DNA of 64,000 nucleotides from the IMG/VR virus record IMGVR_UViG_3300027759_000045, positions 1-64,000 of that record. One strand, given 5' to 3'. This document shows, piece after piece, positions 3,264-33,279 of this stretch (positions are counted from its first letter, which is position 1; the number at the start of each line of letters is the position of its first letter). The position numbers and the translations under genes are program-made. The notes below the pieces were generated by a model. The model saw nothing but the letters and a program-made list of their open reading frames with translations. It had not been told where the DNA came from and did no database searches.

Positions 3264-3339
3264 GCGCCTGTAGCTCAGGGGTCAGAGCAGGGGTCTCATA
3301 AACCCTTGGTCGTTGGTTCAAAACCAACCAGGCGCACCA
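3264..3339 (+). tRNA. tRNA with CAT anticodon (Ile2-like or elongator Met)
   Basis: Acceptor GCGCCTG/CAGGCGC, D arm TAGCTCAG..AGAGC, anticodon loop CTCATAA, GGTTCAA T-loop, encoded CCA. Confidence 0.92.
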
Positions 3340-21845: not shown

Positions 21846-24362
21846 ATGACAGCGCAACCAGTGTGGCTTACTCCTGCAGGTAATTTAGGAACATATCCTG
21901 AGGGTGTGTTCTTTCAATTGCCATTACTAGCAGAAGTTGTAGATGACACTCTGTACTACAGATTGATTGCTGGAGAATTACCTGCAGGTGTACAATTGAC
22001 AGATCTTGGTGCAATCGTAGGAATCCCGTCAGTTGATGTACAAGGTGTTCCTGGTCTGGTGTCCAGAGATACAGTTAGTAAGTTTGCAGTTCGTGCCTAT
22101 ACAAAGAAAACAGTTGGTACGGTTACTGTGGTCAACAGACTTGCCGATCGAACATTTAGCATAACAGTGTCCGGACAAAACGTTCCGGAGTTCATCACAC
22201 CGCCTGGAAACATTGCCACATATTTTGATGGCAGTCAAGTGACAGATTTGCAAATTCAGTACACTGACACCGACCCATTGGATGTGGTAATTGTGAGACT
22301 GATTGCAGGAACGTTGCCGCCCGGAACCACTATAACTACCAAAGGAGTTATATCAGGATTTATTACTCCGGAAGCGCCAAGCGGTGGTGTTGCAGGATTT
22401 TCTAGGGATGGTCAGGGATATGATGAATATGATTTCGACTTTTCCACAAATAGTTTAAATATAAATTATGAATTTATTCTCGAAGTCACTGATGGCAAAG
22501 CCAGTAATATACGTACATTTAGCATTCAAGTATACAGTCGAGACAGTTTGACTGCGGACACAACAGATTTTACTGCAGATAACACATTCATCACAGCCGA
22601 CGGTACTCCGATACGTCCACCCATACTGCTAACACCAGAAGGCAGCATTGGAACTGTTCGCAACGACAACTTCTTTGCATTCAAATTTGACGGAATCGAC
22701 CTCGACGATAATGCAATTGTATATGATATTATTGTAGGTCAGGGGGTTGGCTACGACTCAGATCCGTACGACACAACAGGATTTGATCGCGGCGCTTATG
22801 AGTTACCGCCTGGTGTGACTCTTGATCCAAACAGTGGTTGGTTATATGGTTATATTCCTGACACTGGATTGACCGAACAAACATACTATTTTACTGTGCG
22901 TGTTTCCCAACTTGATAATCCTGATATAAGTAGTCCTTATCAAAGTTACAGTTTGACCATCATTGGACAAATTGGCACAGACATAGTTTGGACAACACCC
23001 GGCACAGCAGTTGATCGCGCTAAAGACCCCAGCCCATTGGGAACTATCAACACCGGCTCAATAAGCACACTGTACGTTGCTGCCGTTAACGTAGACGGCA
23101 TTGGCCTAGAATACAGACTTAAATCTGGCAGTGACAGTAGTTTGCCGCAGGGGTTAGAGTTGATGCCTTCGGGCAACATTGTCGGGCGTGTCAGTTTTAA
23201 TACATTTGCCGTGGATGGTGGCACAACAACTTTTGACGTGGCCAGTGTCAATCGTACCGTGACCAGTCCAACAACATTTGACATGGAATTTGTTTTCACA
23301 GTCGAAGCATTCAATGGTGGTAGTAATGTCAGTGTGTATAAAACTTTCTCTGTGGTTGTGAATAGAGCATTTAATACTCCCTACGAGAATTTGTATATTC
23401 AAGCAATGCCGCCACAGAACGATCGAGATCTGATCAACAATTTGTTGCAAGATTCAGTTGTTATTCCGATTGAATCATTATATCGACGGGATGATCCAAA
23501 CTTTGGCCGTGCCACACAGGTGGTTTATGATCACGCTTATGGATTGACCGCGGCCACTTATATAGATTATGTGTCTAGTTTGTATCTGAATCATTACTGG
23601 AAAAACCTAGTACTGGGAGAAATTTCCACAGCACGGGCATTGGATCCTGTCACTGGCGCTGTTGTGTATGAAGTTGTGTACAGCCGCGTGATTGACAATT
23701 TGGTCAACAATTCGGGTCAAAGCGTTGGCAAACAAGTTGTTATTCCTTATCCAATAGATCCAAATACCCTGGCAGAAATTGATGTGGTATATCCCAACAG
23801 CTTGATAAACATGCGTGATCAAGTGATTGATGTTGTTGGACAAGAAAGTAATTTGTTACCATTATGGATGTTGTCGAAACAAACTGATGGCCGTGTGTTG
23901 GGATTTACACCAGCCTGGGTTATTGCCTATGTGAATCCAGGACAAAGCGGACAAGTTGCTTATAATATACGTACACAATTTGGAGCAAGATTAAATCTAA
24001 TAGACTTCCAGGTTGACCGTTACGAATTAGATCGTGCATTGACACACAACTGGAGTCCTGAATACGAACAGTGGGAGCCACAGCCGCCGGCAGAAACAAC
24101 ATTTGATCTGTCGCCTGGGCCGCAGACTGTGTTCGATGGCGGAAGTTTACGATTCATCACTCCTGTGGATATATACCTTGACAGCAACACACAAGACTAC
24201 GACAAGTATCTGGTGTTCCCAAGAAGAAACATTATTTCTCCAGTTACTCCGATTATTCCTTCACAACCAGTGGGATGGACTAATAATTCTGTCCAACCAG
24301 TTGAATGGGTCAACGATGATACCGATGCAGTTGAATGGATAAATGATCCATCGCAACTTTAA
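21846..24362 (+). CDS. Baseplate/structural protein with Ig-like repeats
   Basis: Repeated W.TP.G.LG and LP.G..L...G.I.G motifs. Confidence 0.7.
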   Translation: MTAQPVWLTPAGNLGTYPEGVFFQLPLLAEVVDDTLYYRLIAGELPAGVQLTDLGAIVGIPSVDVQGVPGLVSRDTVSKFAVRAYTKKTVGTVTVVNRLADRTFSITVSGQNVPEFITPPGNIATYFDGSQVTDLQIQYTDTDPLDVVIVRLIAGTLPPGTTITTKGVISGFITPEAPSGGVAGFSRDGQGYDEYDFDFSTNSLNINYEFILEVTDGKASNIRTFSIQVYSRDSLTADTTDFTADNTFITADGTPIRPPILLTPEGSIGTVRNDNFFAFKFDGIDLDDNAIVYDIIVGQGVGYDSDPYDTTGFDRGAYELPPGVTLDPNSGWLYGYIPDTGLTEQTYYFTVRVSQLDNPDISSPYQSYSLTIIGQIGTDIVWTTPGTAVDRAKDPSPLGTINTGSISTLYVAAVNVDGIGLEYRLKSGSDSSLPQGLELMPSGNIVGRVSFNTFAVDGGTTTFDVASVNRTVTSPTTFDMEFVFTVEAFNGGSNVSVYKTFSVVVNRAFNTPYENLYIQAMPPQNDRDLINNLLQDSVVIPIESLYRRDDPNFGRATQVVYDHAYGLTAATYIDYVSSLYLNHYWKNLVLGEISTARALDPVTGAVVYEVVYSRVIDNLVNNSGQSVGKQVVIPYPIDPNTLAEIDVVYPNSLINMRDQVIDVVGQESNLLPLWMLSKQTDGRVLGFTPAWVIAYVNPGQSGQVAYNIRTQFGARLNLIDFQVDRYELDRALTHNWSPEYEQWEPQPPAETTFDLSPGPQTVFDGGSLRFITPVDIYLDSNTQDYDKYLVFPRRNIISPVTPIIPSQPVGWTNNSVQPVEWVNDDTDAVEWINDPSQL

Positions 24363-24377
24363 CAAAGAAAGATAACA

Positions 24378-26078
24378 ATGACCGTTCCTTTTAATTTCGC
24401 AACACAATCCGGCAACATACCACTCAGTGAGTTGGATGCAAACTTTGCCAATGTGAGTGCTAGTACTATCACAGCAACTTATGTAACTGGCAATAACCAA
24501 AGCAATATTACCGATGTTGGCACACTGAACAGTTTGGCTGTGTACGGCAATGTGTCGGCTGGTAATGTCTCTACCAATGGTATTGTTAGAGCCAATGCTG
24601 TAATTGGGGTCAACTATACAGGTACAAATGTAAGTGTCACAGGCAACATCACAGGTAGTAATATTTCAGCCACTAGTTATACAGGTACCACTGTCAGTGT
24701 CACAGGCAATGTAACTGGCGGTAATATGCGAACTAGTGGTATCGTAAGTGCCACAGGTAACATCACAGGTGGGAATGTTCTGACAGGTAATCTTACGGTC
24801 AATAATATTTCCAGCGATGACTCAACATACGTGACTGTTACCAATGGATTAGAAATATTTGGCGAGTTAATTTCTGAAGCACTTGATGTAACAGGCAATT
24901 CTATCATGAACAATTTAACAGTTACCGGAAACTTTATTGGTACCGATATCACTGTTAACAGTATCAAAAATGGATCAAGTAATGTTGACATTACCAACAC
25001 AAACGGTAACGTAACAATTGGAGTAGATGGAGTTAGTAATGTGTTGGTTGTGACCAGCACAGGTACTAACGTTGCAGGCACAATTAATGCCACTGGTAAT
25101 ATAACTGCTGGCAACTTGGAATCTGTTAACCTTCTAATCAACCGCATCTCCAGCGATGACTCAACTGCAATAACTGTGTTAGATGGGTTATCAGTGCATG
25201 GTGATATTGATGTAATTGGAGATATATCTGCTACTGGCAATGTAACAGGTGCGGCAATAAGTGCTGTTGGCAATGTAACAGGTGGCAATTTGATAATACC
25301 AATTGGGGGGAAGATAAGAGGTAATTTCTCGACCTCAGTTGCCGCAGGCAGAACAATATTCCAAACATCTGTTGCCAACAACGCTACTATACTTACTGCT
25401 ATTCCCAATGGCACAGGCATCACTGCAGGATTGGTGGCATACAATACAAGCGACACAGTCAATTTTGTAAGCGGAGCAATCCTGGCAAACGCCACTGCTA
25501 TTTCAATTAGATCTTCAAATGTTGGCAACACCGCGCCTCTACCAATATTGTTTGAAACCGGCAATGTAGTTCGGGCCACATTTGATGTTAATGGCAATGT
25601 TGGCATTGGCAACACCACACCTGTTGACACACTCAGCGTGGGAGGCAATGCGTATGTGTCGGGTAATATAACAAGTGGTAACTTGGCAGCCACTAACCAC
25701 ACAGGAACCACAGTAAGTGTGTCGGGTAATGTCACAGGAGGTAATTTGATTACTGTAGGACAAATTAAGAATACTGGATTAGAAGTGGTAGGTGTTAATT
25801 ATGCAACCATAACTGCCAATGCTGCCACATCAAATCTAAGTGCCACTATTTCTACTAACATATTGATTGCTAACAACACAGGGTACACACACACTGTAAA
25901 TATGCCTACAAGCCCAGTTGACGGACAAGTGACACAATTTACAATTTTGGGCAACACAGTAACACTGTTAGTAGGAACAGGTACTGTTACTCCAAGTTTT
26001 GCAGGTAGCACCACTGCAGGTTCTGGGTACACATATGTGTACAGGAATACTGATACCACATGGTACAGATCAATCTGA
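24378..26078 (+). CDS. Tail fibre-like protein
   Basis: IPLSELDANF N-terminus; GNVTGGN repeats; SSDDST modules; GNVGIGNTTP. Confidence 0.75.
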   Translation: MTVPFNFATQSGNIPLSELDANFANVSASTITATYVTGNNQSNITDVGTLNSLAVYGNVSAGNVSTNGIVRANAVIGVNYTGTNVSVTGNITGSNISATSYTGTTVSVTGNVTGGNMRTSGIVSATGNITGGNVLTGNLTVNNISSDDSTYVTVTNGLEIFGELISEALDVTGNSIMNNLTVTGNFIGTDITVNSIKNGSSNVDITNTNGNVTIGVDGVSNVLVVTSTGTNVAGTINATGNITAGNLESVNLLINRISSDDSTAITVLDGLSVHGDIDVIGDISATGNVTGAAISAVGNVTGGNLIIPIGGKIRGNFSTSVAAGRTIFQTSVANNATILTAIPNGTGITAGLVAYNTSDTVNFVSGAILANATAISIRSSNVGNTAPLPILFETGNVVRATFDVNGNVGIGNTTPVDTLSVGGNAYVSGNITSGNLAATNHTGTTVSVSGNVTGGNLITVGQIKNTGLEVVGVNYATITANAATSNLSATISTNILIANNTGYTHTVNMPTSPVDGQVTQFTILGNTVTLLVGTGTVTPSFAGSTTAGSGYTYVYRNTDTTWYRSI

Positions 26079-26095
26079 CCACGGTACAACCGCGC

Positions 26096-26101
26096 TAAAT
26101 A
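26096..26101 (+). promoter_or_regulatory. TAAATA late-type box
   Basis: Upstream of a structural gene. Confidence 0.55.
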
Positions 26102-26124
26102 CACTAACAAATTAGGATAAACAA

Positions 26125-27072
26125 ATGTCATCAAACATTAACCCAAACAACATCGACGGCGCATACCCTGTAGCCGGGCAAGATAACAATTCGCAAGGTT
26201 TTCGTGATAACTTCACCAACACCAAAACCAATTTTCAGTTTGCTGCCGACGAAATTAGCCAATTGCAATCTTACGCTGTGTTAAAGGCAGCACTTACAGG
26301 AACTGTGCTTGACAACAACATGAACGGATCTGTGCTGAGTAATGCGCAATTACAAGACATGTCATTGACTCGTGTGGCATTGGGTACACTAAGTGGAAGT
26401 GTTGGTATCAACTATTCCGCTGGTCATTACCAAACTGTAACAACTGCTGGCAGCATTAGTTTAGCATTCACTAACTTTTCTGCCGCAGGAACGTTGAGTT
26501 TTGTCACTGTACGAGTCACTGTGACAAGTACTGCACACACATTGACGTTGCCGGCGCAAGTTGGAAATGCTAGTGCCAGCACCAGCATCTTGGGTATCGA
26601 AGGCATTGCCAGCAACATTATCACGTTTGCCGAAACAGGCACATACGAATTCCAATTCCACACAGATGACGGTGGCAACACTGTTTATCTAAGTGAGTTG
26701 ACTCGTCCACGAAACTATTTCACTAATAAAATTACAGTGGCTGGCGGCATTACTGTGACCAATGGTGTAGTCGTTGTTGCTGGATCTGAAGATTTGGCAG
26801 CTTCAGCAGCCGCTAGTTTGACCGTACCAACCAGTTACTTCACAACTGCCACTGCCGAAACAGCAACATTGGCAGCAGGTACAAATGGACAAATTAAAAC
26901 ATTTGCCATGTACGGAGACGGTGGTGACATGGTCATTACTGTGACCAACGCAGGATGGAAGTCCAGTGGCACCGGAACTATTACATTTAACACAATCGGC
27001 CAGGCATGTACTTTACAGTACATCAATTCAAAATGGTTCTGTGTCGGCAACAACGGAACAGTGTTTGCTTAA
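26125..27072 (+). CDS. Virion structural protein (baseplate/tail-associated)
   Basis: YPVAGQDNNSQGFRDNF N-terminus; beta-rich. Confidence 0.7.
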   Translation: MSSNINPNNIDGAYPVAGQDNNSQGFRDNFTNTKTNFQFAADEISQLQSYAVLKAALTGTVLDNNMNGSVLSNAQLQDMSLTRVALGTLSGSVGINYSAGHYQTVTTAGSISLAFTNFSAAGTLSFVTVRVTVTSTAHTLTLPAQVGNASASTSILGIEGIASNIITFAETGTYEFQFHTDDGGNTVYLSELTRPRNYFTNKITVAGGITVTNGVVVVAGSEDLAASAAASLTVPTSYFTTATAETATLAAGTNGQIKTFAMYGDGGDMVITVTNAGWKSSGTGTITFNTIGQACTLQYINSKWFCVGNNGTVFA

Positions 27073-27077
27073 CCAAA

Positions 27078-27110
27078 CAGGTTGATCTTTACATCAACCT
27101 GCTGTACAAT
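27078..27110 (+). promoter_or_regulatory. Sigma70-type promoter overlapped by a 9-bp inverted repeat
   Basis: caggttgat-ctttac-atcaacctg; TTGATC-17nt-TACAAT. Confidence 0.6.
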
Positions 27111-27116
27111 TAACGC

Positions 27117-27365
27117 ATGGAACATCCGTTAATACCCAGTGTAGACTCGTTGACCATTGACGAGCTGGGCGGTAAAATATCAGAACTCAACAAAAAAATG
27201 GGCATTGCTCTCCGTATGGGCAATACCGAACTGGTACGTCAAATTCAAATGGCAATTGAAACGTATCAGACCAAATACACAGAAAAATCCACAGCTCTGT
27301 TCAACAAGCAAAACAACAAAGATGGATCAGGTCCCAACTTTGATCAAATCATCGACATATCATGA
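27117..27365 (+). CDS. Hypothetical protein
   Basis: 82 aa ORF. Confidence 0.65.
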   Translation: MEHPLIPSVDSLTIDELGGKISELNKKMGIALRMGNTELVRQIQMAIETYQTKYTEKSTALFNKQNNKDGSGPNFDQIIDIS

Positions 27366-27973
27366 ACGTAAGATTACAATACTCCGTTGACTTCTTGGCA
27401 GGATGTTACTTTGATGGCACACTCAGAATGAACAACTACACTGTTCGTTTATGGATGATGACCACCACAATGGATGGCGAAAGTCATAATGTTGCGTTTG
27501 ATCGCATCAAGTTCTTCATTGCCGACTCGTTAGATTCAAGTGTGTTTATCAATGGCAGCAACGAAGAGCAGTGTAAACTGTTGGCCAATGCTGGTGTTAA
27601 AATTACCACATTACCGGATGAACCAGTTGACCAACTGATTGGTATTATGCTATACTGCAAACTAAATGCCATTTGCGAGGATCGCATGGTTATTGGCGAA
27701 GTTGAAGTCAGTAGTGAACTCGGTGGCGGAGTAACTTACATGCACAGTGACGAAGAGCCCATTGGTCCTTATGATCAAAAGGGCTGGTGGCACGACGCCA
27801 ACTTGATGCACTATAATAACAAGATATCCGAAACAGAAAACATCATGAGTTTAGGCGCTATCTCATCCTGGAGAGAACTAGAATTACAATGGCCCGAAGA
27901 CGACGCCCCTGTTTCTGAGGACACTGGTAACACTATTGTGTTTGTTAATTTTAATAAAGATGAAACAAAATAA
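27362..27973 (+). CDS. Hypothetical protein, possibly degenerate QueD/PTPS T-fold
   Basis: Spacing pattern F.A..N.Y.V..F..IK..LD..F.N..P..I..Y..L; no His ligands. Confidence 0.4.
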   Translation: MNVRLQYSVDFLAGCYFDGTLRMNNYTVRLWMMTTTMDGESHNVAFDRIKFFIADSLDSSVFINGSNEEQCKLLANAGVKITTLPDEPVDQLIGIMLYCKLNAICEDRMVIGEVEVSSELGGGVTYMHSDEEPIGPYDQKGWWHDANLMHYNNKISETENIMSLGAISSWRELELQWPEDDAPVSEDTGNTIVFVNFNKDETK

Positions 27974-28469
27974 CGTTGGTGAGTTAATTTACACAGAAGA
28001 AGATGTATGCGATCTTGTAATGAAAGGTCACACGCCTGTGGAACTCAGCGGAATGATTGTTGATTCCACTGTGGAATTAACATATCTAACTGAACTGTTG
28101 GATCCGGTGCCGCAGTGGTTTCTTGAGCAAGAACATATCAATCCTGCAGAGTTCCATGCACAGCAACAGGCCGTATGGCACATGCCCGAGCAGTATCAGA
28201 GCATGGACATTGCGGCACATGTACTGGGATTGTGCAGTACAGAAGCAGAACTGCAACGTTGTGGCAAAGAGTTGCTACTGTATCAAGAACGTGATCTGTT
28301 TGACCTGCTACGTTTTATGGTGTATATAGTTGACACAATGACTGAACACCGGATAATATGGGGTGTCGGACGTGGATCCAGTGTGGCCAGTTATGTACTG
28401 TACAAATTACAGGTACACCGAATCGACAGCATGTACTATAATTTAGATGTGGAAGAGTTTCTACGTTAA
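27960..28469 (+). CDS. DNA polymerase III alpha (DnaE) fragment
   Basis: R...EL...L.F..Y, WGVGRGSSVASYVLY.L..HRID...Y.L..EEFL; stops before the PDxDxD motif. Confidence 0.8.
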   Translation: MKQNNVGELIYTEEDVCDLVMKGHTPVELSGMIVDSTVELTYLTELLDPVPQWFLEQEHINPAEFHAQQQAVWHMPEQYQSMDIAAHVLGLCSTEAELQRCGKELLLYQERDLFDLLRFMVYIVDTMTEHRIIWGVGRGSSVASYVLYKLQVHRIDSMYYNLDVEEFLR

Positions 28470-28496
28470 ATATATGTATATTTCAAAGGAATAGTT

Positions 28497-29066
28497 ATGG
28501 CACAAAAAATATATAAATCGGCTATGGGGCGTGTGGTTGACATCGGAGCACTGATGTTAGAAAACGAAAATGTCCGTGCAGTTGGCAACATGAATGTTAA
28601 TGCTCGTGGTGACACACTGGACAGTGCTAACCGCGTGATTGAGTCCAAGACTAAACAGGTACAAAAACACTATCAGAAACAAAGCACAAACACATCAGCA
28701 ATGGAGCCCACTACCAGCACAATAGTTGCCAAAAAACAACAGGCAGAAAAAGCCAAGATTAAGAAACGCAAAGAAAAGGTTGTAAGTGATTCAGTGTTGG
28801 ATGTATACAATGATGAGCGGTTAGTATCTGTGCATGATAAGACTCAGCCAGACCCTGTTGAAGTTGAAGAAATTCCAGAAATTGAATCATTAGAAGAACT
28901 TGCAGAACTAGAAGCTGTTGTTCCAGAACTAGCACAAGAACCCGCAAAAACTATTCCACGCGGCGGCCTGGCAGCTGCCATTGCCAAAGCACAAACAGTC
29001 AAACAAGAACTACTTACCACACCACGTCAAATGGCACAAAACAAGCCAGGCGTCAACAAAATCTAA
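28497..29066 (+). CDS. Hypothetical late protein
   Basis: AVGNMNVNARGD motif; TAAATA upstream. Confidence 0.7.
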   Translation: MAQKIYKSAMGRVVDIGALMLENENVRAVGNMNVNARGDTLDSANRVIESKTKQVQKHYQKQSTNTSAMEPTTSTIVAKKQQAEKAKIKKRKEKVVSDSVLDVYNDERLVSVHDKTQPDPVEVEEIPEIESLEELAELEAVVPELAQEPAKTIPRGGLAAAIAKAQTVKQELLTTPRQMAQNKPGVNKI

Positions 29067-29075
29067 GAGGAATCA

Positions 29076-29468
29076 ATGAACAAAGCCGCATTTGCACCAT
29101 ATAAATTATCAGCTGACAGTCTCGAGCCATTGAGAGATGCAGTGATTGTGAGAGACATGTCGTTTGACATGCGTCAAACATCCGCGGGTATTGTGTTATT
29201 AAACGACAACGGAACAGGACTAGGTATCCGTCCACGCTGGGCACAGGTCTATGCGGTTGGCCCAGAGCAACAGGATGTTCGGCCCGGTGACTGGATCTGC
29301 GTGGCCCACGGTCGTTGGACACGTGGAATTGAAATTGACGACAACGGTACTGAACGCACCATCCGACGAGTTGATCCCGGTGACATTTTACTAGTGTCAG
29401 ATGAACAGCCGCAAGATGACACAATGAGCACAGCCGAACATGTGGAATCCAAGCATAGATTTGCATAA
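29076..29468 (+). CDS. groES: GroES-like co-chaperonin
   Basis: LEPLRDAVIV, TSAGIVL mobile loop, VYAVGP..V.PGD. Confidence 0.8.
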   Translation: MNKAAFAPYKLSADSLEPLRDAVIVRDMSFDMRQTSAGIVLLNDNGTGLGIRPRWAQVYAVGPEQQDVRPGDWICVAHGRWTRGIEIDDNGTERTIRRVDPGDILLVSDEQPQDDTMSTAEHVESKHRFA

Positions 29469-29947
29469 TGATTTTCAATCACATCAAAGAACTAAAAGCT
29501 CAAGGCAAAAAGATTGGTATCACTTTCAGTACCTTTGATATGTTGCATGCCGGGCATGTTGCTATGCTGAGTGAAGCAAAGAATCATTGTGATTATCTAA
29601 TCTGTGGACTGCAAACAGATCCCACAATCGATCGCCCCGACACCAAAAACAAACCTATTCAAAGTATTGTAGAACGTCAAATTCAATTGGCCGCTTGCCG
29701 TTATGTAGACGAAGTTGTTGTGTACCAAACTGAACAGGATCTAATTGACTTACTGTTAATTCTTCCTTTGGATGTGCGTATACTGGGTGTAGAATATCAA
29801 GACCAAGAGTTCACTGGAAGATACGAAGGCAGCGAACGAGGTATCGAACTGGTGTTTAACGGTCGCGATCATTCTTTTTCATCAAGCAGTCTCCGCAAAC
29901 GTGTGGCAGCTGCCGAAACATTTAAAGCATTAACTGCTCCAAACTAG
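29468..29947 (+). CDS. Cytidylyltransferase (TagD-like)
   Basis: TFDMLHAGH, SIVER, YVDEV, FSSSSLR. Confidence 0.85.
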   Translation: MIFNHIKELKAQGKKIGITFSTFDMLHAGHVAMLSEAKNHCDYLICGLQTDPTIDRPDTKNKPIQSIVERQIQLAACRYVDEVVVYQTEQDLIDLLLILPLDVRILGVEYQDQEFTGRYEGSERGIELVFNGRDHSFSSSSLRKRVAAAETFKALTAPN

Positions 29948-30007
29948 TAGACACACATCGCCACAGATGTTATAATTGTCAACAATGAAACAACAAATTG
30001 CAATAAC

Positions 30008-30928
30008 ATGAAACAACTCTGGACAGAAAAATATAGACCAAATGTAGTCAGCGATTATGTGTTTATTGATGATAACCATAAGCAACAAGTGGCAGCCTGG
30101 ATTACAGACGGAACCATTCCGCATTTGATGTTTTCGGGCGGTCCTGGCACAGGAAAAACCACCTTGGCCAAAGTGTTGATCAACGAACTGGGCATAGACG
30201 AGTATGATGTACTGTATGCCAATGGTAGTAAAGAAGCACGTAAAGTTGAATGGGTTGACAAACTGATCAGTTTCTGTCAGACCATGCCATTTGGCAAGTT
30301 CAAGGTGGTACTGATTGACGAAGCAGACTACATGAATCCCAACTCAGTGCAACCGGCCATGCGTAACTTGATGGAAGACTACAGTCACAGTGTGCGTTTT
30401 ATTTTAACGTGCAACTATCCCAACAAGATTTTGCCGCCAATACATAGTCGTTGTCAGCATATTGCTATTCCCAAAACTGATCACACAGAGTTCACTGCCC
30501 GGGCGGCCACTGTGTTGGTCACAGAAGGTGTGGAGTTTGACATTGACACACTAGACAGCTATGTCAAAGCCACTTATCCGGATCTGCGCAAGTGTTTGAA
30601 TCTGACACAGCAAAACAGTCAAACTGGCACACTGTTGGCACCCAGTGTAGGCGATAGGTCAGTGGGTGACTGGAAGTTGGACTGTGTAGGCCTGTTCAAA
30701 ACAGGCCGGATCCGTGAAGCACGTACACTGCTGTGTCAACAAAGCACTCCGGAAGAAGCAGATGTCACATTCCGTTGGATGTACGACAATCTTGATCTGT
30801 GGAGCCAGGATGTTGAAAAACAAGACCAGGCAATTATCATTATTCGTAATGGCATAGCCAACATTCCTTTGGTAGCAGATCAAGAAATTAATTTAAGTGC
30901 AACATTGATTGAATTGGCAAACTTATGA
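30008..30928 (+). CDS. Clamp loader AAA+ subunit (RFC/gp44-like)
   Basis: WTEKYRP, GGPGTGKT, IDEAD, FILTCNY, SRC. Confidence 0.92.
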   Translation: MKQLWTEKYRPNVVSDYVFIDDNHKQQVAAWITDGTIPHLMFSGGPGTGKTTLAKVLINELGIDEYDVLYANGSKEARKVEWVDKLISFCQTMPFGKFKVVLIDEADYMNPNSVQPAMRNLMEDYSHSVRFILTCNYPNKILPPIHSRCQHIAIPKTDHTEFTARAATVLVTEGVEFDIDTLDSYVKATYPDLRKCLNLTQQNSQTGTLLAPSVGDRSVGDWKLDCVGLFKTGRIREARTLLCQQSTPEEADVTFRWMYDNLDLWSQDVEKQDQAIIIIRNGIANIPLVADQEINLSATLIELANL

Positions 30929-31197
30929 GATACCTGATCCTTACCTACTATAAAAAAGCCAATGGTCAAACTGACGAAGTTATGACTGTGGCCACAAGAT
31001 TAAAAACAAACGACATTCAAACTGCCAGTGTGATTTTAGATTTCAAACTGCTCCGAGTTGAAAAGTGCAGTATGAATGGTGTTCAAGTTCCTAGAGTTTG
31101 GGACACTGTTGTAAGTTATTATTACCAGCACTATGCCAATATTATCGAACGCTTGTTCAATGAAAATGGCCATCCAATTGATATAAAATCAGACTAA
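30925..31197 (+). CDS. Hypothetical protein
   Basis: Coupled ORF. Confidence 0.6.
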   Translation: MRYLILTYYKKANGQTDEVMTVATRLKTNDIQTASVILDFKLLRVEKCSMNGVQVPRVWDTVVSYYYQHYANIIERLFNENGHPIDIKSD

Positions 31198-31951: not shown

Positions 31952-32557
31952 ATGAAGAAATACAAAAATTTAGATAAAGTAATCTTAGCCGATTGTGATG
32001 GTGTGTTGTTAGATTGGGAATGGGCGTTTAATGTTTGGATGCAGGAACACGGATTTGAAGAAGTTCCGGGTAGTAAACTCAACTATGACATGTCAATGCG
32101 ATATGGCATACCCAAAGAGCAGGTTAAAAAATTAATACGCTTGTTCAACGAATCGGCCGCAATTGGCTTTTTGCCTGCACTGCGTGATGCCATGTACTAT
32201 GTTAAACGACTGCATGAAGAACACGGATTTAGATTTCACTGTATCACCAGTTTGAGTCTAGATCCCAATGCACAAAAACTTCGTGAAATGAATCTAAACA
32301 AACTGTTTGGAACATCGGCATTTGAACGTATTGTGTGCTTGGACACTGGAGCCGACAAAGATGAAGTGCTACAAGAATATGAAGGTACTGGGTGTTACTG
32401 GCTTGAAGACAAAATTGAAAATGCCGAAGCCGGATACCGCGCAGGATTAAGGAGCCTTCTGGTAGAGCACGGACATAACATGCACCACTACCATGAAGGC
32501 ATCACAACTGTTAAAAACTGGAAAGAAATTTACCAGTTAATAACTGATCAAGAGTAA
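31952..32557 (+). CDS. HAD-family nucleotidase-like protein
   Basis: LADCDGVLLDW; WLEDK..NA. Confidence 0.8.
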   Translation: MKKYKNLDKVILADCDGVLLDWEWAFNVWMQEHGFEEVPGSKLNYDMSMRYGIPKEQVKKLIRLFNESAAIGFLPALRDAMYYVKRLHEEHGFRFHCITSLSLDPNAQKLREMNLNKLFGTSAFERIVCLDTGADKDEVLQEYEGTGCYWLEDKIENAEAGYRAGLRSLLVEHGHNMHHYHEGITTVKNWKEIYQLITDQE

Positions 32558-33279
32558 AGTTTTAACACTGAACCAATGATAGCATGACGTTGAACATCTC
32601 TTGCTTCCATTGGGCACACTGCAATACCCTCCACATCTTGACGATCTAACTTGACACACAGATCCAGTAGGCCGTTGTTACTGCCCGGACGGTCAGTTTG
32701 TTCCACATCGCCTGTGACCACAATCTTACTGCCTACACCAATGCGTGTCATCAGCATTTTCATCTGATTAGGCGTGGCGTTCTGCATTTCGTCAGCAATG
32801 ATCCAACTGTGCTTGAACGTGCGCCCACGCATGAATGCCAAGGGTGATATTTCTATCAGTTGATTTTCAATCATGGCAGCTATGTCCTGTGGACGATAGG
32901 TCTCACGTAGCACATCTATCAGGGGTCTGGTCCAGGGTTCCATTTTCTGGTTAAGGTCCCCGGGTAGGAATCCATGTGATTCATCCTCTACGCCCACCGC
33001 CGGGCGTGTTAATACTATACGTTCGCAGGTGCCTTCTTTAAGGGCTTTTACTGCGGCTTGCATGGCTAGATAGGTTTTGCCAGTGCCTGCCGGTCCTGCT
33101 GTTACTACGATGTGTTGGTGTTCATCCAACAACGCTAACACAAGTCGTTCTTGATTGCGAGTCCGTGGCACAAGTGCAATCGCTTTTGGGCGATGATACT
33201 GTTGTGCCTGGGAAAAATCAATTGTGTTTTCTACTTGTGCCATACGTTTCTGTGCTTTTGCGGCTCTTTGTCTGCTCAA
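32548..33279 (-). CDS. phoH: PhoH-family ATPase
   Basis: GPAGTGKT, LTRP, GFLPG, FMRGRT, DEMQN, TGD..Q.D. Confidence 0.93.
   Translation of the reverse strand: MSRQRAAKAQKRMAQVENTIDFSQAQQYHRPKAIALVPRTRNQERLVLALLDEHQHIVVTAGPAGTGKTYLAMQAAVKALKEGTCERIVLTRPAVGVEDESHGFLPGDLNQKMEPWTRPLIDVLRETYRPQDIAAMIENQLIEISPLAFMRGRTFKHSWIIADEMQNATPNQMKMLMTRIGVGSKIVVTGDVEQTDRPGSNNGLLDLCVKLDRQDVEGIAVCPMEARDVQRHAIIGSVLKLYS

What the first reader, a model, noticed from the sequence alone, without database searches (positions are those of the whole stretch)
27960..28469. Stand-alone 169-aa DnaE piece ending just before the catalytic aspartates: an intein-less split C-family polymerase
Seen: GVGRGSSVASYVLY...ID...EEFL then a stop, with no intein-like tail, and the next gene is unrelated. 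Established: in DnaE, GxGRGS...FERFLNPER is directly followed by the catalytic PDxDxD. Inference: the replicase is assembled from separate polypeptides, with the rest encoded outside the window; a clamp loader lies 1.5 kb downstream.
Basis: partly seen in the sequence, partly recalled or inferred. Interest (0 to 1): 0.6.

Follow-up and report, generated by a model that had tools for sequence, protein, structure and literature searches.

The report
Two-piece minimal phage Pol III polymerase
The 169-residue gene is real and is the first half of a tiny DNA polymerase III-like enzyme that giant phages encode as two far-apart genes without any intein; this arrangement was already described from genome comparisons in 2021, and I found no bench test of it.

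Summary
Observation confirmed. Window 27960-28469(+) encodes a 169-aa protein ending ...GVGRGSS...EEFLR-stop. Its residues 71-169 match the first half of the Pol III alpha palm (E. coli alpha 277-393) and stop five residues before the catalytic aspartates.

The window lies in a 346,856-bp terminally repeated jumbo-phage record. A 192-aa ORF at genome 276307-276885, outside the window, starts MSADIDIDF. It carries all three catalytic Asp and the finger KKSH motif, and matches alpha 399-781.

Both pieces are conserved families (phrog_11127, phrog_11778; more than 7,500 metagenomic clusters each) under purifying selection. The break falls at the same place in every complete homologue checked. The pieces co-occur and were never fused. 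They are predicted to pair strand-to-strand (ipSAE 0.91; best control 0.00).

There is no intein, PHP, thumb, beta-binding or OB part. The phage also has an intact 885-aa T4-type family-B polymerase, so calling this "the replicase" is not supported; it is more likely a second, minimal polymerase.

Iyer et al. 2021 (PMC7824862) already described exactly this split minimal Pol III in group 2.2 jumbo phages, so it is already known. I found no experimental study of it. New here are the junction statistics, the structural mapping, and compact versions in 140-160 kb phages.

The parts
27960..28469 (+). Gene for piece 1 (169 aa + TAA): the N-terminal, NTP-binding subunit of the split minimal Pol III alpha-like polymerase
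   Evidence: ORF and translation. PF07733 E 3.1e-7. phrog_11127 end to end, E 1.2e-40. dN/dS about 0.15. AF2 model pLDDT 91. The partner gene (piece 2, 192 aa, MSADIDIDF...) lies outside the window at G000:C1:276307-276885(+) = L010:6307-6885.
27960..28169 (+). Residues 1-70 of piece 1: a poorly conserved, phage-specific N-terminal region with no counterpart found in solved DnaE structures
   Evidence: Structure alignments to Pol III alpha start at model residue 71-73. Residues 3-9, 19-32 and 66-70 are predicted to touch piece 2. The region is variable in alignments A2 and A3.
28170..28466 (+). Residues 71-169 of piece 1: the first half of the Pol-beta-like palm of C-family polymerases (equivalent to E. 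coli alpha 277-393)
   Evidence: VIA-align Z 10.7-12.6, rmsd 2.1-2.4 A, 94-98 residues aligned to E. coli, M. tuberculosis and Thermus Pol III alpha. The next unrelated fold scores Z 3.4. The profile matches E. coli alpha 319-392.
28362..28382 (+). G-V-G-R-G-S-S motif (residues 135-141), the nucleotide-triphosphate-binding G[GS] motif of the Pol-beta-type nucleotidyltransferase fold
   Evidence: G135, G137, R138, G139, S140 and S141 are invariant in 83 diverse homologues. The motif aligns to GPGRGSG of E. coli alpha. Its role in triphosphate binding is taken from established knowledge of DnaE and Pol-beta-type enzymes, not tested here.
30008..30928 (+). RFC/T4 gp44-type clamp-loader ATPase, a conserved neighbour of piece 1
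   Evidence: phrog_168 E 4.5e-73, plus AAA and DNA_pol3_delta2. The same linkage occurs in phage CBB, where piece 1 is CBB_328 and the clamp loader is CBB_332. In Slickus01 the clamp loader lies between the two pieces.

Best explanation
The ORF encodes the N-terminal subunit of a two-subunit, minimal C-family (Pol III alpha-like) nucleotidyltransferase of a freshwater jumbo phage.

Piece 1 (169 aa) supplies the first half of the Pol-beta-like palm, including the GRGS triphosphate-binding motif. Piece 2 (192 aa) is encoded 248 kb away on the record, or about 98 kb if the map is read as a circle. It supplies the DxD strand, the third catalytic Asp (KIDFL) and a cut-down finger module (IRPxK, FKKSH..YA).

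The break lies inside the catalytic fold, in the loop that in E. coli alpha joins residues 393 and 399. The two proteins must therefore associate non-covalently to make one active site, with the piece-1 strand IIWGVG pairing with the piece-2 strand DIDIDF. No intein or splicing is involved.

The enzyme lacks the PHP, thumb, beta-binding and OB/tau domains, and it sits beside an intact T4-type family-B polymerase. Most likely it is a second, specialised DNA polymerase of the phage replisome (strand-specific synthesis, gap filling or repair) rather than the main replicase.

Shown here: homology, the split, conservation, selection, co-occurrence, and a confident predicted interface. Inferred: that the dimer forms in cells, that it polymerises DNA, and what it is used for.
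For: Homology of piece 1:
- Pfam, PHROG and PDB profile matches.
- Structure Z 10.7-12.6 to alpha 277-393.

Piece 2:
- Found at G000:C1:276307-276885.
- phrog_11778 E 3.9e-52 and phrog_405 (full DnaE) E 1.2e-7.
- Collinear sub-threshold matches to DnaE chains only.
- AF2 model pLDDT 92. Foldseek top 17 hits are all C-family polymerases.
- VIA Z 9.8 to PolC, 9.4 to Thermus alpha 460-838 and 7.9 to E. coli alpha 399-781, with about 187 of 192 residues aligned; the next fold scores Z 3.0.

Active-site residues are invariant across 83 diverse sequences each:
- Piece 1: R100, E104, G135, G137, R138, G139, S140, S141.
- Piece 2: D4, D6, D8, H35, G38, Y40, K67, D69, R137, K140, H170.

The junction is fixed:
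- 80 of 80 diverse piece-1 ORFs stop 29-37 residues after GRGS.
- In 76 of 80 diverse piece-2 ORFs an ATG lies 1-10 residues before DxDxD. Two of the rest are cut by contig ends and two have the motif but no ATG ahead of it in the open frame.
- 80 of 80 close relatives start MSADID.. or MRADID...

Other support:
- Purifying selection: median dN/dS 0.15 and 0.11.
- Co-occurrence: both pieces are in all 4 large IMG/VR records and in CBB, Atu_ph07, Slickus01 and G011-G013, always as separate genes. They are found in 94 and 96 phage records with near-identical host tallies.
- Predicted complex: ipSAE 0.91 in three runs against a best control of 0.00. The mark was reached by 58 of 80 solved complexes and 2 of 110 mismatched pairs. 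At least 96% of contacts agree between runs and partner pLDDT is at least 89. Contacts include piece-1 residues 134-135 with piece-2 residues 7-9.
- Replication context: clamp loader beside piece 1; primase and DnaB-type helicase beside piece 2.
- An independent published description of the same system exists (PMC7824862).
Against: - I found no biochemical or genetic data for any member.
- The thumb and about 90 residues of the fingers that grip primer-template in DnaE are missing (length accounting), so processive templated synthesis is not assured.
- No clamp-binding motif or proofreading domain was identified.
- The piece-2 profile does not reach significance against PDB sequences by itself (best E 0.074).
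- The complex score may partly reflect the model's memory of intrachain contacts in solved DnaE structures, and user-supplied alignments were used, so the calibration holds only roughly.
- Expression was seen only as short contigs of close relatives in lake RNA libraries, which may contain DNA.
Confidence: 0.75

Rival explanations
1. Pseudogene or assembly artefact: a decayed 5' fragment of a once full-length dnaE, with no function.
For: It is only 169 aa, ends just before the catalytic residues, and its neighbours are unrelated.
Against: - dN/dS is about 0.15.
- More than 7,500 clusters at 90% identity, of about 170 aa, occur in metagenomes.
- A dedicated PHROG family matches end to end.
- 80 of 80 diverse homologues end at the same point.
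- The piece is present in 94 sequenced phage records.
- The active-site motif is invariant.
- A matching second half exists in the same genome.
Confidence: 0.01
2. A split-intein DnaE, as in cyanobacteria: the two halves are joined after translation by protein trans-splicing into one polymerase chain.
For: DnaE is the classic host of a natural split intein (established knowledge; papers listed). Related phages carry an intein in their family-B polymerase (PMC6892783).
Against: - Piece 1 aligns to alpha right up to its last residue (169 = alpha 393), and piece 2 aligns from its first residue (1 = alpha 399). That leaves no room for the roughly 100-aa N-intein and 35-aa C-intein.
- No intein family appears in the Pfam scans of either piece.
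- Piece 2 starts M-S-A-D, with no C-intein and no +1 Cys/Ser/Thr junction.
Confidence: 0.01
3. The two-piece enzyme is the main replicase, and the family-B enzyme serves repair or another role.
For: - Catalytic residues are invariant.
- Both genes sit in replication modules next to the clamp loader, primase and helicase.
- The family is extremely widespread.
Against: - An intact 885-aa T4 gp43-type polymerase with an exonuclease region is present (phrog_262, E 4e-200). One was also found in four of the five other carrier records searched; the fifth is an incomplete contig.
- The T4-type clamp loader normally serves such a family-B enzyme (established knowledge of T4).
- The mini enzyme has no thumb, proofreading domain or clamp-binding domain.
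Confidence: 0.1
4. The heterodimer is a nucleotidyltransferase that is not a templated DNA polymerase (untemplated tailing, priming-related synthesis or nucleotide-signal synthesis), or it is a non-catalytic replisome scaffold.
For: - The Pol-beta-type fold supports many transferase chemistries (established knowledge).
- The DNA-gripping thumb and much of the fingers are absent.
- No activity has been measured.
Against: - The finger motifs specific to C-family polymerases (RPxK, FKKSH..YA) are retained and nearly invariant.
- The closest structures are only DnaE and PolC.
- The invariant metal-binding Asp triad argues against a purely structural role.
Confidence: 0.13

Closest known systems
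Split minimal DNA polymerase III alpha of group 2.2 jumbo phages (Iyer, Anantharaman, Krishnan, Burroughs & Aravind 2021, Viruses 13:63, PMC7824862)
   Same: - Two stand-alone proteins from distantly located genes: an N-terminal NTP-binding part and a C-terminal Mg/template-binding part.
- No other Pol III domains.
- Accompanied by a classic family-B polymerase and an RFC-type clamp loader.
- Relatives of the window's genes are the phages of that group (RaK2, GAP32, CBB, 121Q, PA5oct, XacN1, SCTP-2, Atu_ph07).
   Different: Nothing essential differs; the window's phage is an uncultured freshwater member.

Added here:
- The exact junction and its constancy.
- dN/dS values.
- Structural mapping onto alpha 277-393 and 399-781.
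- The predicted interface.
- Compact versions, with the genes 3-18 kb apart, in contigs and in complete phages of 140-160 kb that are not jumbo.
Bacterial DnaE (Pol III alpha; e.g. E. coli 2HNH, Thermus 2HPI/3E0D, M. tuberculosis 5LEW)
   Same: The Pol-beta-like palm with the GRGS motif, the Asp triad (E. coli D401, D403, D555) and the finger NKSH motif. About 20-24% identity over the structurally aligned parts.
   Different: - DnaE is one chain of about 1,160 aa with PHP, thumb, full fingers, a beta-binding HhH domain and an OB/tau-binding tail.
- Here there are 361 aa in two chains and none of those extra parts.
- Residues 1-70 of piece 1 have no DnaE counterpart.
Cyanobacterial split DnaE joined by the Ssp/Npu DnaE split intein
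   Same: A C-family polymerase encoded by two distant genes.
   Different: - That split lies far downstream in the fingers and is healed by trans-splicing into a full-length DnaE (established knowledge).
- Here the split is inside the palm, no intein is present, and the product must remain two chains.
Family-B polymerases encoded in two pieces (adjacent ORFs in relatives of this phage; intein-containing PolB in MIJ3)
   Same: They are precedents for phage polymerases encoded in more than one piece. Slickus01, G011 and Atu_ph07 carry PolB as two adjacent ORFs. MIJ3 PolB carries an intein (PMC6892783).
   Different: They have an unrelated fold (RRM-like palm). The pieces are adjacent and split between domains, not inside the catalytic fold.

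Membership tests
C-family DNA polymerase catalytic core (Pol III alpha / PolC) | Pol-beta-like palm with the G[GS] triphosphate-binding motif | tested here: met
   GVGRGSS at residues 135-141 is invariant in 83 sequences. It aligns to E. coli GPGRGSG. Structure Z 10.7-12.6 to alpha palm 277-393.
C-family DNA polymerase catalytic core (Pol III alpha / PolC) | Three catalytic aspartates (E. coli D401, D403, D555) | tested here: met
   They are absent from the window's ORF but present in the partner: D6, D8 and D69 of piece 2, invariant in 83 sequences. They align to MPDIDIDF and KxDFL of solved DnaE chains.
C-family DNA polymerase catalytic core (Pol III alpha / PolC) | Finger-domain motifs (..RPG.. 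and ..FNKSH..Y..) | tested here: met
   IRPGK (R137 and K140 invariant) and FKKSH..YA (H170 invariant; K167, K168, Y174 at 90% or more). They align to E. coli 598-641 and 743-767.
Canonical bacterial DnaE (full-length replicase subunit) | N-terminal PHP domain | tested here: not met
   PF02811 finds nothing in the 346.9-kb genome at E<=1, while all 14 control genomes ring.
Canonical bacterial DnaE (full-length replicase subunit) | Thumb, complete fingers, beta-binding HhH domain, C-terminal OB | tested here: not met
   PF17657 and PF14579 find nothing at E<=10. The full-length DnaE profile phrog_405 hits only the two small ORFs. 192 residues span alpha 399-781. The OB domain was not searched separately.
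Canonical bacterial DnaE (full-length replicase subunit) | Single polypeptide | tested here: not met
   The two ORFs are 248 kb apart on the record. They are separate in every relative examined.
Split-intein DnaE | N-intein at the end of the first half and C-intein at the start of the second | tested here: not met
   No intein families appear in the Pfam scans. Both chains align to alpha up to or from their terminal residues.
Jumbo-phage split minimal Pol III (Iyer et al. 2021, group 2.2) | [quoted passage not shown] | tested here: met
   phrog_11127 at 27960-28469 and phrog_11778 at genome 276307-276885. Description in PMC7824862.
Jumbo-phage split minimal Pol III (Iyer et al. 2021, group 2.2) | Co-occurrence with a classic family-B polymerase and an RFC-type clamp loader in a genome over 200 kb | tested here: met
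   885-aa PolB. Clamp loader at 30008-30928. The record is 346,856 bp with terminal repeats.
Jumbo-phage split minimal Pol III (Iyer et al. 2021, group 2.2) | The two proteins assemble into an active polymerase | not testable with these tools
   Only a prediction is available: ipSAE 0.91 against a best control of 0.00. The mark was reached by 58 of 80 solved complexes and 2 of 110 mismatched pairs. I found no assay in the literature searched.

The most novel reading that the evidence does not exclude
The two-chain, 361-residue enzyme is a working DNA polymerase with a dedicated replisome task (for example one strand, or gap filling after primer removal). It may work with the conserved neighbours of piece 2: the zinc-finger protein phrog_11058 and the opposite-strand protein phrog_11637.

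It would then be the smallest known C-family polymerase and the only known one whose active site is built across two polypeptides. Its collinear, never-fused arrangement, from 3 kb apart in some contigs and 11 kb in complete phages of about 150 kb to about 100 kb apart in jumbo phages, would mark either an ancient two-subunit state of the family or a very old fission.
Probability: 0.35. Interest if true: 0.7.

Novelty: already known. Interest (0 to 1): 0.4.

Why it matters
If the two chains do form an active enzyme, it would define the minimal catalytic core of the bacterial-type replicative polymerase family. It would also be a natural case of an active site assembled across a break inside the Pol-beta-like fold. 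Finally, it would show that a very abundant group of large freshwater, marine and enterobacterial phages runs two unrelated polymerase families side by side.

The family is huge, with more than 7,500 sequence clusters per piece. It is often mis-annotated as 'hypothetical', 'putative membrane protein' or a truncated CDS, and I found no bench test of it. The open question is therefore experimental, not one of discovery: the genomic finding itself was published in 2021.

Tried and rejected
- **Nucleotide search.** A megablast of window 27000-31000 against phage records found nothing; relatives are visible only at protein level.
- **Piece 2 against sequence libraries.** Pfam finds nothing in piece 2. 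Its 83-sequence profile does not reach E 0.01 against PDB sequences. The link to DnaE rests on the PHROG profile, collinear weak matches and structure.
- **Further DnaE parts in the genome.** Searches for PHP, finger, HhH_6 and the full-length DnaE profiles phrog_405 and phrog_11165 found nothing beyond the two ORFs.
- **Fused or adjacent versions.**
  - No piece-1 match lies within 3 kb of 80 close piece-2 loci, and no piece-2 match lies within 3 kb of the 13 piece-1 loci.
  - No piece-1 match lies within 1.5 kb of 80 diverse piece-2 loci, and no GxGRGS motif is found there.
  - No piece-1 ORF runs on past the junction.
  - The word-based protein search sees only 0.55-1.75 times the query length. 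A fused protein of about 360 aa would have been outside its range, which is why I checked fusion at DNA level. Only the best 80 of at least 590 loci per scan were inspected.
- **Conserved opposite-strand neighbour of piece 2 (phrog_11637).** The protein-atlas feature search gave no usable lead.
- **Expression.** Lake metatranscriptome libraries hold only short contigs of close relatives (90-98% alike) over the gene. That shows presence in an RNA library, not transcription.
- **Large representative-protein search.** Not run, because family scans and the word search had already settled what the protein is.
- **Pseudogene, intein and artefact readings.** Considered and rejected (see rival explanations).
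Full report
**What is in the window.** The ORF at 27960-28469 (+) starts at ATG, stops at TAA (28467-28469) and encodes 169 aa. It ends ...IIWGVGRGSSVASYVLYKLQVHRIDSMYYNLDVEEFLR-stop. It overlaps the end of the upstream gene (27362-27973) by 14 nt. An unrelated gene of unknown function follows (28497-29066, phrog_14844), then a GroES-like gene, a cytidylyltransferase-like gene and an RFC/gp44-type clamp loader at 30008-30928.

The similarity to DnaE is not chance:
- Pfam DNA_pol3_alpha positions 24-94 of 260 match at E 3.1e-7, above the curated cut-off.
- A profile of 83 homologues aligns residues 97-170 to E. coli Pol III alpha 319-392 at E 4e-7 and hits only Pol III alpha chains.
- An AlphaFold2 model (pLDDT 91) superposes residues 71-169 on E. 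coli alpha 277-393 and M. tuberculosis DnaE1 307-413. Z is 10.7-12.6, rmsd 2.1-2.4 A, with 94-98 residues aligned. The next unrelated fold scores Z 3.4.
- Residues 1-70 have no counterpart in the solved polymerases.

**Where the window comes from.** The window is the first 64 kb of a 346,856-bp virus record with direct terminal repeats, estimated complete. At protein level its relatives are the RaK2, GAP32, CBB and 121Q group, PA5oct-like Pseudomonas phages, XacN1, SCTP-2 and Atu_ph07. Near-identical DNA occurs in freshwater and lake metagenomes from many studies.

**The missing half.** Scanning the whole genome with full-length DnaE profiles (phrog_405, phrog_11165) gave, besides the window's ORF, only weak collinear hits in one 192-aa ORF at genome 276307-276885 (+).

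Its product starts MSADIDIDFADR... It contains GYFKIDFLN and IIRPGK, and ends with YTFKKSHAISYA.... It belongs end to end to a second phage family, phrog_11778 (E 3.9e-52), and matches the DnaE profile phrog_405 at E 1.2e-7.

A profile of 83 homologues does not reach significance against PDB sequences. At a relaxed threshold, however, all nine chains listed are DnaE, with collinear segments: DIDIDF against MPDIDIDF, KIDFL against KFDFLGL, IRPxK against LFRPG, and FKKSH..YA against FNKSHSAAYA.

Its AlphaFold2 model (pLDDT 92) finds only C-family polymerases among the top 17 Foldseek hits. It aligns over about 187 of 192 residues to PolC 970-1295 (Z 9.8), Thermus alpha 460-838 (Z 9.4) and E. coli alpha 399-781 (Z 7.9). 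The next fold scores Z 3.0.

So piece 1 ends at the equivalent of alpha 393 and piece 2 begins at alpha 399. The break is in the loop between the ...FERFL helix and the catalytic DxD strand, inside the Pol-beta-like palm.

**What is absent.** PHP, the Pfam finger domain and the HhH beta-binding domain find nothing anywhere in the genome, even at permissive thresholds, while the control genomes ring. Piece 2 covers 383 residues of E. coli alpha in 192 residues. By length accounting, the thumb (58 residues between DxD and KxD, against about 150 in E. coli) and about 90 residues of the fingers are gone; this is an inference. The whole enzyme is 361 residues.

**It is a conserved, selected, two-gene system.**
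- Each piece has more than 7,500 clusters at 90% identity in public metagenomes, with lengths tightly around 170 and 192 aa.
- Among IMG/VR relatives, 80 of 80 diverse piece-1 ORFs stop 29-37 residues after GRGS.
- All 80 close piece-2 ORFs start MSADID.. or MRADID...
- In 76 of 80 diverse piece-2 ORFs an ATG lies 1-10 residues before DxDxD. Two of the other four are cut by contig ends; the other two carry the motif but have no ATG ahead of it in the open frame.
- Median pairwise dN/dS is 0.15 for piece 1 and 0.11 for piece 2.
- The residues expected to make the active site are invariant across 83 diverse sequences each. In piece 1 these are R100, E104 and G135-x-G137-R-G-S-S141. In piece 2 they are D4, D6, D8, H35, G38, Y40, K67, D69, R137, K140 and H170.

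The two genes also travel together:
- Both are in all four large IMG/VR records tested, and only a 39%-complete fragment lacked piece 1.
- Both are in CBB, Atu_ph07 and Slickus01.
- Record counts and host tallies in the phage collection are nearly identical, 94 against 96.
- They were never fused or adjacent in any locus inspected.

Their separation varies widely:
- About 85-105 kb on the circular map in close relatives.
- 34 kb in CBB and 44 kb in PA5oct.
- 11 kb in the 141.6-kb Alishewanella phage Slickus01 and in a complete 157.9-kb IMG/VR phage.
- About 3 kb in one contig.

In every compact case located by coordinates (Slickus01, G011, G012, G013, G015), piece 1 is upstream on the same strand.

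**Do they assemble?** A complex prediction with both alignments gave ipSAE 0.91, 0.90 and 0.91 in three runs against 0.00 for the best of three controls. That mark was reached by 58 of 80 solved complexes and 2 of 110 mismatched pairs in the tool's calibration. At least 96% of contacts agree between runs and partner pLDDT is at least 89.

The most confident contacts put piece-1 residues 134-135 (the strand before GRGS) against piece-2 residues 7-9 (the DIDIDF strand). Piece-1 residues 66-75 lie against piece-2 residues 41-44 and 63-65. This is what reconstitution of one palm sheet would need.

There are caveats. The model may be recalling intrachain contacts of solved DnaE structures. My own alignments were used, so the calibration holds only roughly. 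A prediction is not a measurement.

**No intein.** Neither protein has room for intein halves, because both align to alpha up to or from their terminal residues. Pfam finds no intein family.

**Is it the replicase?** Probably not the main one.
- The genome has an intact 885-aa T4 gp43-type family-B polymerase just outside the window, at genome 72874-75531 (PF00136 E 7.5e-32; phrog_262 E 4e-200 over its whole length).
- A family-B polymerase was also found in CBB, Atu_ph07, Slickus01 and the 157.9-kb phage G011. None was found in G012, a 65%-complete contig that carries both pieces.
- The clamp loader near piece 1 is of the T4/RFC type.
- The mini enzyme shows no proofreading, thumb or clamp-binding part.

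Its genes do sit in replication modules. Piece 1 is 1.5 kb upstream of the clamp loader here and in CBB. Piece 2 is next to a zinc-finger protein (phrog_11058), a possible gp62-like protein (phrog_11758), a DnaG-type primase and a DnaB-type helicase. In Slickus01 the clamp loader lies between the two pieces.

A second, specialised polymerase for one strand, gap filling or repair is the most economical reading. This step is inference.

**What is already known.** Iyer et al. [quoted passage not shown] It accompanies a family-B polymerase, and they suggest a role in synthesis of one strand or in repair.

That is this system. Weinheimer & Aylward 2022 also note PF07733 as a marker of a large marine jumbo-phage cluster (PMC9123017).

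I found no paper with biochemical, structural or genetic data on it.

**Verdict.**
It overreaches in calling the enzyme the replicase and in implying that a full DnaE is distributed over several genes.
- Novelty: already known. The window holds an ordinary member.
- Added here: the exact and constant junction, selection estimates, the structural mapping, a confident predicted interface, the phage-specific N-terminal 70 residues of piece 1, and compact collinear versions in phages well below the 200-kb jumbo threshold.

Noticed in passing
L105 (Alishewanella phage Slickus01, OQ508957.1) and IMG/VR records behind L193, L191, L192, L196: The split mini-Pol III is not confined to jumbo phages. A 141.6-kb circular phage and a complete 157.9-kb IMG/VR phage carry both pieces about 11 kb apart on one strand, with piece 1 upstream. 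In Slickus01 the clamp loader lies between them. In one 15-kb contig the pieces are only about 3 kb apart.
   Followed up: partly
L106:1986-2561 (Agrobacterium phage Atu_ph07, NC_042013.1); CBB and GAP32 piece-2 genes: Database annotation of piece 2 is often wrong. The RefSeq CDS FDI40_gp074 starts at an internal ATG and drops the catalytic DxDxD; the full ORF starts MKNIPDIDIDF. In CBB, GAP32 and several Erwinia phages the gene is labelled 'putative membrane protein' or 'hypothetical'.
   Followed up: partly
genome G000:C1:274254-277237 (L010:4254-7237), outside the window: There is a conserved gene block around piece 2: a phrog_11758 protein (its Slickus01 homologue weakly resembles the gp62-type clamp-loader small subunit), a C2H2-like zinc-finger protein phrog_11058, a 304-aa ORF with no family, piece 2, and on the opposite strand a 124-aa phrog_11637 protein with a WWWESNRxIPINIFL motif. 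The zinc-finger protein and the opposite-strand protein recur beside piece 2 in Atu_ph07 and a CBB-like contig. They may be further subunits.
   Followed up: partly
genome G000:C1:72874-75531 (L011:487-3144), just outside the window; L271, L272: The family-B polymerase is one 885-aa ORF in this phage. In Slickus01, the 157.9-kb IMG/VR phage and Atu_ph07 it is carried as two separate ORFs (adjacent in Slickus01 and Atu_ph07, about 9 kb apart in the IMG/VR phage). The PA5oct relative MIJ3 is reported to have an intein in it.
   Followed up: no
window 21846-27072: Three large ORFs precede the finding: 838 aa, 566 aa with many repeats of the kind GN(V/I)(S/T)..., and 315 aa. They look like tail-fibre or other virion proteins. 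The 566-aa ORF has a long overlapping antisense open frame (24677-25735), which is probably an effect of the repeats.
   Followed up: no
window 3264-3339; 29076-29947; 32548-33279: A single tRNA-Met (CAT) gene. A GroES-like gene and a cytidylyltransferase-like gene lie between piece 1 and the clamp loader. By eye, a PhoH-like ATPase ORF lies on the minus strand; this was not scanned.
   Followed up: no
window 27908-28309: Lake-water metatranscriptome libraries contain short contigs (151-160 nt, 92-98% alike) over the piece-1 gene of close relatives. Freshwater and lake DNA metagenomes from about 16 studies hold part of this stretch: two runs hold 0.68-0.92 of the sampled words, and the rest about a third.
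   Followed up: partly
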